DNA of 64,000 nucleotides, taken from positions 62,001-126,000 of IMG/VR virus record IMGVR_UViG_3300023174_000040. One strand, written 5' to 3'. This document shows positions 26,730 through 57,046 of this stretch, piece after piece. Position numbers and translations under genes: made by a program. Positions within the stretch are counted from its first letter, which is position 1, and every line of letters begins with the position of its first letter. The notes beneath the pieces are model-generated. The model made no database searches, was not told the DNA's origin, and worked only from the letters and a program-made list of their open reading frames with translations.

Positions 26730-27101
26730 TCAGTCTCTTATATTTTCGATATTAAATAGCCAGTTCTTAAAACTCTCTCTCCAATACATAGTAGATGCTA
26801 CCGGACTACTGAGAGTATAGTCCATATTTCTTCCGCTATTCTTTACAAATCCTAATTTTTTGTAGAATCTATTCAAAGCTTCTTTCTTACCTTTATCTGC
26901 TTCTGGTCTGATCACAATAGGCTTACCAACTCTTTTTGCATAATCCTGCAACATTCTGATTATATCTGAACCAACACCACTGTTTTGTTTTTCCTCTGGT
27001 ATTTTGACTGTCTCCAATTCGATTTTATGTTTATCTTCAAATGCAGAAACATTTGCGAACGGGTATTTTTGATTTATTTTGTCCAAAACAAGGTCTAGCA
27101 T
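26730..27101 (-). CDS. GNAT-family acetyltransferase
   Basis: QNSGVGSDIIRML (Q/RxxGxG) and LNRFYKKLGF; real start MLDLV, the upstream part is a shadow of the + strand gene. Confidence 0.75.
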   Translation of the reverse strand: MLDLVLDKINQKYPFANVSAFEDKHKIELETVKIPEEKQNSGVGSDIIRMLQDYAKRVGKPIVIRPEADKGKKEALNRFYKKLGFVKNSGRNMDYTLSSPVASTMYWRESFKNWLFNIENIRD

Positions 27102-27213
27102 AATATTATCTATCTTTTTATTCAAAAAAAATACAGAGATTGCTCTTGACCCTGAACGCCTTTTTGCTACAATGCTCACTGTTCGAGGACGATTTTTAAC
27201 CAAAGGAGTAGAT

Positions 27214-27603
27214 ATGATTAAGTTTCTTAGTTTTGTTTCTTGTTTAGTGGTTTGTGCTGGATCGTATGCCGGCCAGACCAGTATTGATAGCACCGATACA
27301 TCAGTTTCGGTTCTCAGGACCGATAGCATTGCCCCTGCTGCAACAACTGCCGCCCCAGTTGCTATCGCTAATTGCTGCAACACTTGCAATAGTTGTAATG
27401 ATGGTTGCATCAACAACTGTGATAGTTGCTGCAAGAAGCGTGAAAGGGCTTTCAGCCGCTCCCGCACTCATACTGAGAATGTAACCTGCCAGAACTGCCA
27501 GCAGGTTAAAGAGGAGACGGATACCGTTGAGACTAGTCGCAAGCGACTCAATGGTAGTGTAATCAAGAGAAGTCGTAGCCGTACTTCCGTTTCGGTACGG
27601 TAA
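27214..27603 (+). CDS. secreted Cys-rich, basic low-complexity protein
   Basis: aaggag RBS, signal peptide MIKFLSFVSCLVVCAGSYA, CCNTCNSC repeats, RSR-rich tail. Confidence 0.75.
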   Translation: MIKFLSFVSCLVVCAGSYAGQTSIDSTDTSVSVLRTDSIAPAATTAAPVAIANCCNTCNSCNDGCINNCDSCCKKRERAFSRSRTHTENVTCQNCQQVKEETDTVETSRKRLNGSVIKRSRSRTSVSVR

Positions 27604-27617
27604 CTGCTTGTCCCGCC

Positions 27618-27718
27618 ACCCCCTTGCTCGTGTCTCCCGTGTTCAACCCGCACGGTCAACGTAGCATATCACGGTTCTCCTGCACAACCAGATATGCCGA
27701 GACTCCGAGCAAGGGGGT
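27618..27718 (+). ncRNA. candidate structured non-coding RNA (three-way junction)
   Basis: 13-bp outer stem acccccttgctcg/cgagcaagggggt, plus gtctc/gagac, ccgtg/cacgg and gcatatc/gatatgc; follows a motif copy at 27584-27602 and ends in a T-run. Confidence 0.55.
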
Positions 27719-27735
27719 TTTTTATTTTAAAAAAT

Positions 27736-27933
27736 ATGAGAGAATTAAACTCTGAGGACTTGAGTAAGTTCGCAACCAATAACGGTTTCATCCTTAAAAA
27801 AAAAGATGAAGAATATGAACTTTATAGCAAAACAGAAGATAAGGTTCTGCTTTTCAAGAGTGTAAAAGAAACATTTAGAAGAATCTCTGACGAAATTAAT
27901 ACTTTAAAGAAAACGAAAAATGTCCTACATTGA
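27736..27933 (+). CDS. hypothetical protein
   Basis: Start MRELNSE within ORF 27694..27933. Confidence 0.6.
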   Translation: MRELNSEDLSKFATNNGFILKKKDEEYELYSKTEDKVLLFKSVKETFRRISDEINTLKKTKNVLH

Positions 27934-28291
27934 CAACAGTAAGGAAATCAAAGAGACTATTCTCAAGTTGAATAGCCTATGTGAAGCAAATAAAGAAATT
28001 TATATCAATCAACTAGATCACAAGGCTAATCTTAGTTCTGCTCTTTTCAAGATCAAGAATAATCTTGAAAGGCTAGTTAAGAATCCAAAAGACTTGCCAG
28101 AAGTTATTTTCAATTGCTTTGAAATTGCAAAGCCATTGACACCATACTATAGCACCGATCTTGGTAAAAACAAAATTGATCAGCCATTGACCAACGAAGA
28201 AAAATTAGGTTTTCTTGAGAAGTTGGAAAAGTTTCAAGTCACAGATGAAATGAAAGAAAAATATAAAGGAACAGTCAATCAAGGAGGTTAG
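27920..28291 (+). CDS. hypothetical protein
   Basis: 123-aa ORF. Confidence 0.7.
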   Translation: MSYIDNSKEIKETILKLNSLCEANKEIYINQLDHKANLSSALFKIKNNLERLVKNPKDLPEVIFNCFEIAKPLTPYYSTDLGKNKIDQPLTNEEKLGFLEKLEKFQVTDEMKEKYKGTVNQGG

Positions 28292-28292
28292 T

Positions 28293-28487
28293 GTGAACTC
28301 TGATTATCGGGTTGTAAATATTGGTGAGGTCAAGGACTATTTCATTATTCAAGAAGTTTACTATAATGATAATGAAGAAGTAATCAGTGCGACAAATGCA
28401 AGCCCCTGTGGAAATTCAATTGAAGAACTGGTACAATTTGCCGATTGTGTTTTAAAGGCAAGTAAAAAACCAGTCCTAAAATTGTAA
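28293..28487 (+). CDS. hypothetical phage protein (YRV...EVYY family)
   Basis: Resembles 54455..54691. Confidence 0.65.
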   Translation: MNSDYRVVNIGEVKDYFIIQEVYYNDNEEVISATNASPCGNSIEELVQFADCVLKASKKPVLKL

Positions 28488-28541: not shown

Positions 28542-28818
28542 GGCCCAGTAGCTCAATTGGATAAGAGCAACAGCCTTCGTGAAATAGGAGTGCTTAAAGA
28601 GAAATCTTTAATGTAGAATCGCTTAAATTCGGTGAAGGCTTAACTGCTAATACCGAGCCAAGCCTAAGCAATTAGGAAGGTGTAGAGACTTAACAGGCGA
28701 CACCTAAAGTTGAAAGACAATGGTGAAGATAAAGTCCAGACCACAAACAGTAATGGTAGTGAAAACTATAGTGGTACCGCTAAGCTGTAGGTTCCAAGTT
28801 CGATCCTTGGCTGGGTCA
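28542..28818 (+). tRNA. tRNA-Arg(UCU) interrupted by a group I intron
   Basis: Exons 28542-28577 and 28780-28818 join into a cloverleaf (GGCCCAG/CTGGGTC, ACAGC-CTTCTAA-GCTGT, TTCGATC loop). Confidence 0.9.
28578..28779 (+). ncRNA. group I self-splicing intron (202 nt, no ORF)
   Basis: Core motifs aaattcggtgaa, aataccgagcc, gtagagact, aaagtcc; terminal G; P1 CTTC/GGAG with a U-G wobble at U28577. Confidence 0.9.
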
Positions 28819-28876: not shown

Positions 28877-29016
28877 ACAAGAGTAGCTCAACGGGTAGAG
28901 CGTTTGACTGTCCAAAGCCACTGAATTGAAGCTCAAAAAAGCTGGCAATCTATCGGGTTCAATACCCAAACAGTGGATTAATCAAATGGTTGCAAGTTCG
29001 AATCTTGCCTCTTGTG
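28877..29016 (+). tRNA. tRNA-Asn(GUU) with a 67-nt anticodon-loop insertion
   Basis: ACAAGAG/CTCTTGT acceptor with G73, D- and T-arms intact; removing 28911-28977 restores TTTGA-CTGTTAA-TCAAA. Confidence 0.8.
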
Positions 29017-51381: not shown

Positions 51382-51466
51382 GCTGAAGTGGCGAAACTGG
51401 CGAAACGCAGGGGACTTAAAATCCCCCACATTAGAAACACTGCGGGTTCGAATCCCGCCTTCAGCA
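51382..51466 (+). tRNA. tRNA-Leu(UAA)
   Basis: GCTGAAG/CTTCAGC acceptor, GGGGA-CTTAAAA-TCCCC anticodon arm, long variable arm, TTCGAAT loop. Confidence 0.95.
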
Positions 51467-51482
51467 CTGTAAATAAAAACAA

Positions 51483-51842
51483 GGGGGCGTAAAGGTATCG
51501 ACTGGATAAAAAGATTTATAACTGCATGTCGAGGTTAGTCGAACGGCCTCGTTAAAATTCGACTAAAGCCTTAACTGGCACTGTTAATTACGCAATGGCT
51601 GCCTGATAAAAAGGGCAACCACGAATCTAGGAAGCTAATGTTGGATGCGTCCTAAAATTCGTCGTCAAATCCAACTGGTTTTCTGGTGGTCAACTTACCT
51701 GAAAACGAGAAAATAGGTTGAGAGATTTTAAAGACTTTTGTTTATTGTAATCTTTAAAATCTATTTGAACAATAAACCAAACATGTGAAGAAGTTATATT
51801 TTGATTTATTTCAGGACAGGAGTTCGACTCTCCTCGCCTCCA
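51483..51842 (+). ncRNA. ssrA: tmRNA; tag (A)GTVNYAMAA*
   Basis: 5' GGGGGCG pairs with 3' CGCCTCC-A, G-U at position 3, T-arm caggag-ttcgact-ctcct; tag ORF ggc act gtt aat tac gca atg gct gcc tga. Confidence 0.92.
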
Positions 51843-51867
51843 TTTATAATTTCAACTAAAGGAAAAC

Positions 51868-56778: not shown

Positions 56779-57042
56779 CCGAAGGTAGCAAAACGGTTAA
56801 TGCAACAAACTCATGAATTTTCGTGCCATACGATTGGAAACTTCGTATGGGATGTCGTCAAATTCGGTGAAACCTAAATGCGTGAGCATATGGCAATGCC
56901 GAGCGAAGCCCGTAAGGGAACGTGTAGAGACTTAACGGCGACCACCTAAATCGTAAGATATGGTGAAGACAAAGTCCAAGGAGTGGTGAAAATCACACAA
57001 ACTTGAATTTGTAGACTGTGGGTTCGAATCCCACCCTTCGGA
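56779..57042 (+). tRNA. tRNA(CAU), probably Ile2, interrupted by a group I intron
   Basis: Exons 56779-56814 and 57006-57042 give CCGAAGG/CCTTCGG-A and ACAAA-CTCATAA-TTTGT; lies 16 nt after tilS. Confidence 0.88.
56815..57005 (+). ncRNA. group I self-splicing intron (191 nt, no ORF)
   Basis: aaattcggtgaa, caatgccgagc, gtagagact, aaagtcc; terminal G; P1 CATGAA/TTCGTG with a U-G wobble at the 5' splice site. Confidence 0.9.
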
Positions 57043-57046
57043 CGTA

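What the first reader, a model, noticed from the sequence alone, without database searches (positions are those of the whole stretch)
27584..27725. Unannotated ~100-nt structured RNA with its own promoter-like motif
Seen: a degenerate copy of the 19-nt motif is followed by a GC-rich fold with a perfect 13-bp outer stem, a 5-bp continuation and two internal hairpins, then a T-run. I do not recognise SRP, 6S or riboswitch signatures. Inference: it is an independently transcribed phage small RNA.
Basis: partly seen in the sequence, partly recalled or inferred. Interest (0 to 1): 0.6.

Follow-up and report, generated by a model that had tools for sequence, protein, structure and literature searches.

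The report
Conserved structured small RNA in a jumbo phage
Between a phage-specific promoter motif and a terminator, this uncultured freshwater jumbo phage carries a ~115-nt Y-shaped RNA that its relatives keep through compensating base changes; it matches no known RNA family, most likely is released as a small RNA, but no transcript data could be obtained.

Summary
Window 27618-27718 folds into a three-way junction: P1 13 bp, P1b 5 bp and two hairpins (-50.8 kcal/mol, z -6.2). A T-run follows it, and a genuine copy of the phage's 18-19-nt promoter-like motif precedes it (61 of 62 copies lie on the + strand).

Seven distinct versions came from related uncultured phages. Each folds the same way on its own. 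The lower P3 stem is rewritten but still pairs, while loop L3 (GGUUCUCCUGCAC), CAACC in L2 and the U-run never change. Rfam gives no match, and the element is single-copy in the genome.

The motif overlaps the last codons of a conserved secreted Cys-rich gene that has its own conserved sigma70-type promoter. Those codons show no synonymous change. A YTGT start-site signature at +14..+17 is invariant amid variable flanks.

Best reading (about 0.55): a roughly 115-nt RNA starts near G27610, ends at its own P1 + U-run terminator, and also forms the 3'UTR of the Cys-rich mRNA. Rivals are a compound terminator/3'UTR element only, or a leader gating downstream genes.

No expression data could be obtained, so a discrete transcript is inferred, not shown. 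It is a new RNA family of a known kind (phage promoter-proximal, terminator-bounded ncRNAs).

The parts
27146..27173 (+). Sigma70-type promoter of the upstream Cys-rich gene (TTGACC, 16-nt spacer, TG-extended TACAAT). Transcripts from it run into the RNA element.
   Evidence: Consensus scan. The -35 and extended -10 are conserved in all seven relatives while the spacer varies.
27214..27603 (+). Gene for a 129-aa secreted (signal peptide), Cys-rich protein with a basic C-terminal half. Its last 7 codons are the promoter-like motif.
   Evidence: Translation. Homologues of 61-94% identity. In-frame indels and synonymous changes among relatives. No Pfam or PHROG family.
27584..27601 (+). Copy of the phage-specific promoter-like motif (consensus GTTTCYYTYYGGTACGGT), with a perfect core at 27594-27601. 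It overlaps stop codon TAA 27601-27603.
   Evidence: flank score 9.4 bits, reached by 0.06% of random positions. No synonymous variation in these codons across 7 lineages.
27608..27611 (+). TTGT at +14..+17 from the core start. The inferred transcription start is G27610, the purine at +16.
   Evidence: Position +16 is a purine in 57 of 61 copies and +15 a pyrimidine in 48 of 61. Six ORFs have ATG exactly at +16. YTGT is invariant in all 7 RNA loci while both flanks vary. The start itself is inferred, not measured.
27618..27718 (+). Structured RNA core, a three-way junction. P1 27618-27630/27706-27718; P1b 27632-27636/27699-27703; P2 27637-27642/27650-27655 with loop L2 27643-27649; J2/3 27656-27663; P3 27664-27676/27686-27697.
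   Evidence: Fold. The same architecture appears in 7 distinct homologues folded separately. Covariance model R1 scores them 73-130 bits. Pair counts.
27673..27685 (+). Invariant segment GGUUCUCCUGCAC (top of P3 plus loop L3), the candidate functional contact. It contains an anti-Shine-Dalgarno-like CUCCU.
   Evidence: Identical in all 7 distinct versions although the stem beneath it is rewritten.
27718..27728 (+). U-run (T6 A T4) directly after P1, the tail of the intrinsic terminator. The expected 3' end of the RNA lies here.
   Evidence: A run of at least 5 T follows P1 in every relative.
27736..27933 (+). First downstream gene (65 aa, unknown function). It has no Shine-Dalgarno sequence and no promoter of its own in this genome. 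It is context, not part of the RNA.
   Evidence: In L026/L027 another gene lies between the RNA and this gene. In L030/L089 it has its own consensus promoter copy.

Best explanation
This is a conserved, roughly 115-nt structured RNA module of a lineage of uncultured freshwater jumbo phages.

Shown: the sequence folds into a three-way junction closed by an 18-bp P1/P1b helix. Relatives keep the fold by compensatory changes while two loops stay invariant. A bona fide copy of the phage's own promoter-like motif lies just upstream, and a U-run lies just downstream.

Inferred: RNA polymerase directed by that motif starts at about G27610 and stops at the P1 + U-run intrinsic terminator. That would release a small RNA of about 113-119 nt. 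The same RNA is also made as the 3' end of the sigma70-driven Cys-rich mRNA, the layout of a 3'UTR-embedded sRNA with an internal promoter and a shared terminator.

Inferred more weakly: the invariant L3 loop (UUCUCCUGCAC, with the anti-SD-like CUCCU) is the working surface. It would act either as a base-pairing seed for a host RNA or as a protein-binding site. A fraction of transcripts reading through the terminator would carry the element as a leader into the downstream genes.
For: Structure: z = -6.2. Seven distinct homologues each fold alone into the same P1/P1b/P2/P3 architecture. P3 arms pair with their own partner (-10 to -13 kcal/mol). Swapped between the window and L026 lineages they pair poorly (-4). 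On the model-fitted alignment 91.2% of cells are paired against 86.9 +/- 1.1 in shuffles (0 of 500 reach it). Seven pairs change on both sides, and slid controls reach at most 50% paired.

Constraint beyond a terminator: the 13 nt of L3, CAACC in L2 and the U-run are invariant. Against the 94.5%-identical relative, the perfect-match run 27558-27726 coincides with motif + RNA + T-run and is the 5th longest run in 11 kb. Ordinary terminators in this genome are simple 33-45-nt hairpins.

Promoter: the core occurs 61 times on + and once on -, mostly intergenic and 9-140 nt before ORFs. There is a Y/R start signature at +15/+16, and six ORFs have ATG at +16. This copy's flank score is reached by 0.06% of random positions. 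The 7 motif codons show no synonymous variation, whereas about half of the preceding 53 codons vary synonymously. YTGT at +14..+17 is invariant within variable non-coding flanks.

Linkage: the RNA stays next to the Cys-rich gene even where the downstream gene differs or has its own promoter.

Precedent: in phiKZ and other Pseudomonas phages, promoters followed closely by terminators yield abundant short RNAs of 71 and 141 nt, confirmed by northern blot (PMC10914365).
Against: Start, end and abundance are therefore all inferred.

No RNA polymerase or sigma factor that could read the motif was found in the 323-kb record, which is 64% complete. If the enzyme ignores intrinsic terminators, no discrete RNA would result.

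One tRNA (Ser) begins at +8 from the motif core, which conflicts with a start at +16.

In the L030/L089 lineage the core upstream of the RNA carries a G-to-A change, yet the RNA is still conserved. Its conservation therefore does not depend on a perfect motif.

No complementary target for L3 is enriched in the phage genome.

Only 7 distinct sequences in about 4 lineages are available, and the alignment used for counting was fitted to the structure.
Confidence: 0.55

Rival explanations
1. Compound terminator or 3'UTR element only. The structure ends and stabilises the sigma70-driven Cys-rich mRNA. The promoter-like motif in front of it merely serves downstream genes or is retained for coding reasons. 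No separate small RNA has a function.
For: A GC-rich 13-bp stem directly followed by a U-run is a canonical intrinsic terminator. It always follows the Cys-rich gene, whose sigma70-type promoter is conserved. It is still conserved where the upstream motif core is mutated (L030/L089). The motif overlaps conserved C-terminal codons.
Against: A terminator needs only a stem and a U-run. Here a 75-nt insert with two hairpins is kept by compensatory changes and has 13- and 5-nt invariant loop segments. Other terminators in the genome are simple hairpins. The motif codons lack any synonymous change, and the non-coding YTGT at +14..+17 is invariant.
Confidence: 0.22
2. Cis-acting leader or attenuator. 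The motif is the promoter of the downstream genes (27736 onward). The structured RNA with its terminator gates them, with read-through by antitermination or a terminator-insensitive polymerase, as at lambda PR'-tR' (6S/StxS).
For: In the window, L002, L029, L031, L026 and L027 the next gene starts 17-24 nt after the U-run with no promoter of its own. The next phage-type motif lies 18 kb downstream. Exactly in the lineage whose upstream core is mutated, a new consensus promoter sits after the terminator. At genome 43005 another motif copy is followed by a perfect 20-bp hairpin + T6 and then a ribosome-binding site and ATG. Precedents: PMC7547250 and PMC10914365.
Against: The element stays with the upstream gene, not with a particular downstream gene. 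A 144-aa gene of unknown function follows it in L026/L027 and the 65-aa gene elsewhere. P1/P1b is too stable (-50 kcal/mol) and has no evident alternative fold for a switch. No antiterminator was identified.
Confidence: 0.15
3. RNase III-type processing site, as in T7 intergenic sites. The roughly 18-bp coaxial P1/P1b helix would be cleaved to separate and stabilise flanking messages.
For: A long, nearly perfect helix with a small internal loop lies between two genes and just after a promoter. A 20-bp hairpin occupies an equivalent place at genome 43005.
Against: This does not explain the invariant loops or the conserved U-run. Cleavage cannot be tested here.
Confidence: 0.05
4. Chance fold with no function.
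For: None beyond the fact that GC-rich islands fold well.
Against: z = -6.2. Conservation with compensatory changes across lineages whose neighbouring proteins are only 61-79% identical.
Confidence: 0.02

Closest known systems
5'UTR-derived / prematurely terminated ncRNA candidates of virulent Pseudomonas phages (e.g. phiKZ P112-T102, 71 nt; TU237, 141 nt), PMC10914365
   Same: A phage promoter is followed within about 70-140 nt by a terminator, giving a short structured RNA upstream of protein genes in a jumbo phage. A minority of transcripts read through.
   Different: Those RNAs were seen by ONT-cappable-seq and northern blot; this one is only predicted. There is no sequence or Rfam relation. 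This element also doubles as the 3'UTR and terminator of an upstream host-polymerase-driven gene.
Lambda 6S RNA / StxS (PR' to tR' short transcript of lambdoid and Stx phages), PMC7547250
   Same: A promoter is immediately followed by an intrinsic terminator. The short RNA is a by-product or regulator, and the downstream genes need read-through.
   Different: StxS depends on Q antitermination at a sigma70 promoter, and no Q-like factor is known here. The promoter type differs, and there is no sequence similarity.
Type I 3'UTR-derived sRNAs with an internal promoter and shared terminator (DapZ, MicL; from my own knowledge of the field)
   Same: The promoter lies inside the 3' end of the upstream coding sequence. 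The sRNA shares the terminator of the mRNA, and a conserved single-stranded seed is presented by a structured RNA.
   Different: Those are bacterial and Hfq-dependent, with sigma70 or sigmaE promoters. Here the internal promoter is a phage-specific motif, and the partner and target are unknown.
Ordinary Rho-independent terminators
   Same: A GC-rich stem abuts a U-run, conserved at the end of a gene.
   Different: The 'loop' is a 75-nt two-hairpin insert with invariant loop sequences maintained by covariation. Other terminators in this genome span 33-45 nt.

Membership tests
Any Rfam 15 family (SRP, 6S, riboswitches, Y RNA/YrlA, ribozymes, tRNA-like and others) | Covariance-model score at or above the family's gathering threshold | tested here: not met
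   There is no hit at the site at gathering score. At E up to 10 the only hit is a 10-bit noise match to a eukaryotic lncRNA model.
Rho-independent terminator | GC-rich stem immediately followed by a U-run, on the strand of the upstream gene | tested here: met
   P1 of 13 bp (8 G-C pairs) is followed by U6. The U-run is present in all relatives.
Rho-independent terminator | Simple hairpin with a short loop; no constraint on loop sequence | tested here: not met
   The insert is 75 nt with two hairpins. The L3 and L2 loop sequences are invariant while stems covary. The genome's other hairpin + T-run elements span 33-45 nt.
Phage promoter-proximal, terminator-bounded ncRNA (phiKZ-type 5'UTR ncRNA; lambda 6S/StxS type) | Functional promoter immediately upstream | tested here: inconclusive
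   By sequence statistics this is a genuine copy of the genome-wide motif. It is conserved beyond coding need, with an invariant start-site signature. Promoter activity was not measured, and no cognate polymerase or sigma factor was found.
Phage promoter-proximal, terminator-bounded ncRNA (phiKZ-type 5'UTR ncRNA; lambda 6S/StxS type) | Terminator less than 250 nt downstream of the start and upstream of the next gene | tested here: met
   The predicted start is about 27610, the U-run is 27718-27728, and the next ATG is at 27736.
Phage promoter-proximal, terminator-bounded ncRNA (phiKZ-type 5'UTR ncRNA; lambda 6S/StxS type) | Short transcript actually accumulates | not testable with these tools
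3'UTR-derived sRNA, type I (internal promoter, shared terminator) | Promoter within the 3' end of the upstream coding sequence, and a terminator shared with that mRNA | tested here: met
   The motif occupies the last 7 codons and the stop of ORF 27214-27603. There is a single terminator after the RNA. This holds at sequence level only.
3'UTR-derived sRNA, type I (internal promoter, shared terminator) | Base-pairing seed with identifiable targets or chaperone binding | tested here: inconclusive
   The invariant L3 loop is a candidate seed. No enriched complementary site exists in the phage genome. The host is unknown.
Bacterial Y RNA (YrlA) with Rsr | YrlA model match and a nearby or co-encoded Ro60/Rsr (TROVE) gene | tested here: not met
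   There is no Rfam match and no TROVE domain in the 323-kb record.
Riboswitch | Known aptamer class, plus mutually exclusive terminator and antiterminator folds | tested here: not met
   No aptamer model matches. The MFE and centroid structures are identical and very stable, so no competing fold is evident. An unknown ligand class cannot be excluded.
Protein-coding sequence (small ORFs 27624-27755 and 27694-27933) | Reading frame preserved among relatives | tested here: not met
   The homologous RNA segments are 107, 108, 109, 110 and 111 nt long, with 1-2-nt indels inside P2/P3.

The most novel reading that the evidence does not exclude
A previously undescribed family of phage-encoded regulatory RNAs. 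The scaffold is a rigid three-way junction that displays an invariant anti-Shine-Dalgarno-like loop (UUCUCCUGCAC). It is produced both from a host-type promoter (as a 3'UTR) and from a phage-specific promoter. It acts in trans on host translation, or on a host RNA-binding protein, in a phage that itself appears to use many leaderless or short-leader mRNAs.
Probability: 0.25. Interest if true: 0.65.

Novelty: new member of a known kind. Interest (0 to 1): 0.5.

Why it matters
Few phage-encoded non-coding RNAs have been characterised, and almost none come from uncultured jumbo phages. This candidate rests on comparative evidence: compensatory changes, invariant loops and a conserved start signal. 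That gives a defined RNA of about 115 nt, a defined loop to mutate, and a covariance model for finding more members. It also helps anchor the phage's own promoter grammar, an 18-nt motif with a start at about +16 that includes apparent leaderless mRNAs. That grammar is useful for annotating this phage lineage.

Tried and rejected

2. Cultured-phage database. blastn of 27000-28300 found nothing.

3. IMG/VR. Only one close relative was found, by RNA pattern, by two neighbouring proteins and by the promoter motif. Single motif hits in other contigs are at chance level. L036 is a GC-rich chance match.

4. Genome contigs. The 23-specified-base pattern gave 32 hits, about the number expected by chance. 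None scored above 21 bits with model R1, so I found no evidence of the RNA in bacterial genomes.

5. The metagenome scan found only the window's own contig, its close relative, an identical 10-kb contig and L027's contig.

6. Polymerase. No T7-like RNA polymerase, multisubunit beta/beta' or sigma region 2 was found. Only weak helix-turn-helix hits appeared. The seven largest ORFs are RCC1-repeat, subtilase, tail and structural proteins.

7. Target search for loop L3 in the phage genome found no enrichment; the only match of 11 nt or more is the locus's own opposite strand.

8. Y RNA idea. There is no TROVE gene.

9. Alignments. MAFFT and model-based alignments mis-register the rewritten P3 stem and the L030/L089 P1b/P2 region. 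I therefore also folded each sequence alone and did an arm-swap test. In that test the L030/L089 columns are uninformative, because their 3' arm also pairs with the loop.

10. The Y-shaped fold after the motif at genome 38882 has no counterpart in the 251-kb relative, so its conservation could not be assessed.

11. Three relatives had no retrievable DNA.

Full report
**Source.** The window is bases 62001-126000 of a 323,267-bp IMG/VR virus record. CheckV estimates it 64% complete and its GC content is 35.8%. It encodes rIIA-like, NAPRTase, subtilase and RCC1-repeat proteins, a tmRNA, tRNAs and group I introns. It appears to be an uncultured jumbo phage. Related contigs carry lake-metagenome sample names.

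**Observation.** The fold exists exactly as described.
- P1 is 27618-27630 with 27706-27718, 13 perfect bp.
- After a 1-nt bulge comes P1b, 27632-27636 with 27699-27703.
- Hairpin P2 is 27637-27642/27650-27655, with 7-nt loop L2.
- An 8-nt joiner leads to hairpin P3, 27664-27676/27686-27697, with 9-nt loop L3.
- The MFE is -50.8 kcal/mol, z = -6.2, and 0 of 200 shuffles fold as well.
- T6-A-T4 follows directly.
- Rfam finds nothing there, even at E up to 10, and the sequence is single-copy in the genome.
- The genome has 40 perfect inverted repeats of at least 12 bp. This is the only GC-rich one spanning about 100 nt and followed by a T-run. The usual hairpin + T-run elements span 33-45 nt.

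**The "19-nt motif".**
- The core GGTACGGT occurs 62 times, 61 on the + strand, against about 2 per strand expected by chance.
- A logo shows conservation from -10 to +7 (GTTTCYYTYYGGTACGGT). There is a further signal downstream: a pyrimidine at +15 (48 of 61) and a purine at +16 (57 of 61).
- Copies are almost all intergenic, 9-140 nt before ORFs.
- Six ORFs have their ATG exactly at +16, and tRNA-Lys starts at +20.
- I read this as a phage-specific promoter with its start at +16, giving some leaderless mRNAs.
- One observation does not fit: tRNA-Ser starts at +8.
- No polymerase or sigma factor that could read the motif was found in the incomplete record.
- The copy at 27594-27601 has a perfect core. 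Its flanks score 9.4 bits, reached by only 0.06% of random positions, and it carries TTGT at +14..+17. It is a real, somewhat degenerate member.

**Relatives.** Cultured phages gave nothing, and IMG/VR holds only one 94.5%-identical relative. In that comparison the perfect-match run 27558-27726 coincides with motif + RNA + T-run. It is the 5th longest run in 11 kb, comparable to the run over the nearby group I intron.

Word searches with the two flanking proteins found homologues of 61-94% and 75-94% identity. Their contigs all carry the element. This gives seven distinct versions: window (identical in L002, L035, L090 and L091), L029, L031, L026, L027 (identical in L028), L030 and L089.

**Conservation of structure.**
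- Each version, folded alone, gives the same three-way junction.
- P1 is nearly invariant. Its terminal pair switches A-U, G-U and G-C, and one G-C becomes G-U.
- P1b shows G-U and shifted pairs.
- P2 is 6 bp in most versions, 7 bp in L089 and 8 bp in L030, with one position switching between G-C and A-U.
- The lower half of P3 has entirely different sequences in the window/L029, L026/L027 and L030/L089 groups, yet always pairs.
- Swapping P3 arms between the window and L026 lineages drops the stability from about -10 to -12 kcal/mol to about -4.
- On the model-fitted alignment 91.2% of cells pair, against 86.9 +/- 1.1 in shuffles (0 of 500). Seven pairs change on both sides (5 of 500). Partners slid by 1-3 columns give at most 50% paired. 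The caveats are few lineages and an alignment fitted to the model.
- Lengths differ by 1-2 nt inside the stems (107-111 nt), so the small overlapping ORFs are not conserved.
- G-U pairs, the T-run and the motif all point to the + strand.
- By contrast, GGUUCUCCUGCAC (27673-27685), CAACC in L2 and the U-run never change.

**Context.** The upstream ORF 27214-27603 is a real gene. It has a signal peptide, a variable linker with in-frame indels, a Cys-rich block and a conserved basic C-terminal half. All relatives keep a sigma70-type promoter (TTGACC, then TGnTACAAT) with a variable spacer. Host polymerase should therefore transcribe the gene and run into the RNA, which is thus also its 3'UTR and terminator.

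The motif forms the last seven codons plus the stop. About half of the preceding 53 codons show synonymous variation, but these seven show none. In the non-coding stretch after the stop, YTGT at +14..+17 is invariant while both flanks vary. Both facts argue for selection on the motif as a nucleic-acid signal.

Downstream the picture differs by lineage.
- In the window, L029 and L031 the 65-aa gene follows without a promoter or Shine-Dalgarno sequence.
- In L026/L027 an extra 144-aa gene of unknown function intervenes.
- In L030/L089 the core before the RNA reads GGTACAGT, and a new consensus promoter copy sits after the terminator.
- The genome itself has one GGTACAGT copy with perfect flanks at genome 71234, so that variant may still work.

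**Interpretation.** The element is a conserved structured RNA (confidence about 0.95).

Most likely (about 0.55) it is released as an RNA of about 113-119 nt, starting at about G27610 and ending at the P1 + U-run terminator. It is also present on the Cys-rich mRNA. The invariant L3 loop would be its functional contact. This is the arrangement of a 3'UTR-embedded sRNA with an internal promoter. It also matches the promoter-then-terminator short RNAs documented in phiKZ and other Pseudomonas phages (PMC10914365) and in lambdoid phages (StxS, PMC7547250).

The rivals are as follows.
- A compound terminator/3'UTR element only (0.22). This does not explain the invariant loops.
- A leader gating downstream genes (0.15). 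The absence of downstream promoters and the L030/L089 pattern support it. The element's fidelity to the upstream rather than the downstream gene weakens it.
- An RNase III-type processing site (0.05).
- Chance (0.02).

These readings are not mutually exclusive, because read-through transcripts would carry the RNA as a leader.

**What was not possible.** The host is unknown, so L3 targets could only be sought in the phage genome, without result. The polymerase that uses the motif is unidentified.

**Verdict.** The "independent small RNA" interpretation is plausible and partly supported. It is a new RNA family of a known kind and of moderate interest.

Noticed in passing
Whole genome G000 (window copies at e.g. 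9337, 12967, 14152, 45628, 45962, 50902, 58720, 61501): A phage-specific promoter-like motif GTTTCYYTYYGGTACGGT occurs 61 times on the + strand and once on the - strand. It has a Y/R signature at +15/+16, and six ORFs have ATG exactly at +16, which suggests leaderless mRNAs. A looser class (GATTYYGGTACGGT) is dense at genome 169-184 kb, ahead of many 60-100-aa genes. No cognate RNA polymerase or sigma factor was found.
   Followed up: partly
G000:C1:38882-39100 (outside the window; locus L082): A second Y-shaped fold lies right after a motif copy. A 15-bp outer stem encloses two hairpins (about 95 nt; the 130-nt segment has z -7.6). It has no U-run and is followed by two tandem promoter copies and a 359-aa ORF. 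It is not present in the 251-kb relative.
   Followed up: partly
G000:C1:43005-43090 (outside the window; locus L083): A motif copy is followed after 12 nt by a perfect 20-bp hairpin plus T6, and then a ribosome-binding site and the ATG of a 126-aa ORF. This is another promoter, terminator, gene arrangement.
   Followed up: no
window 27214-27603 with promoter 27146-27173: A conserved small secreted protein with a signal peptide, a CC/CxxC-rich block and an Arg/Ser-rich basic tail. It has no Pfam or PHROG family and lies in a GC-rich island (about 50% against 32%). A strongly conserved sigma70-type extended -10 promoter precedes it, giving a moron-like unit.
   Followed up: partly
window 28567-28760 and 28877-29016; window 56805-56998 and 56976-57043: Two group I introns lie next to or inside tRNA-like sequences. 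One Rfam tRNA hit spans 140 nt. ARAGORN calls an odd tRNA overlapping the end of the second intron. These are probably intron-interrupted tRNA genes.
   Followed up: no
window 51382-51467 and 51483-51845: The phage encodes tRNA-Leu(UAA) immediately followed by a full-length tmRNA (Rfam 139.6 bits; tag peptide GTVNYAMAA).
   Followed up: no
G000:C1:172319-172414 (window 110319-110414, beyond the window end): A class II tRNA called Ser with the unusual anticodon ACU begins directly after the motif core, at +8. This is at odds with the start site inferred at +16.
   Followed up: partly
L030:1520-1527 and L089 (about 945-952): In the lineage whose motif before the RNA reads GGTACAGT, an additional consensus promoter copy sits between the RNA terminator and the 59/65-aa gene. 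The pattern suggests compensation between the two promoters.
   Followed up: partly
window 26730-27100 (- strand): A GNAT-type acetyltransferase domain lies in the C-terminal part of the long minus-strand ORF 26730-27467. The true gene probably starts near 27100, so it does not overlap the Cys-rich gene.
   Followed up: no
window 27645-27649 versus 27685-27689: The invariant CAACC in loop L2 is identical to the 3' strand of upper P3. It could therefore pair alternatively with GGUU (27673-27676), giving a possible conformational switch.
   Followed up: no
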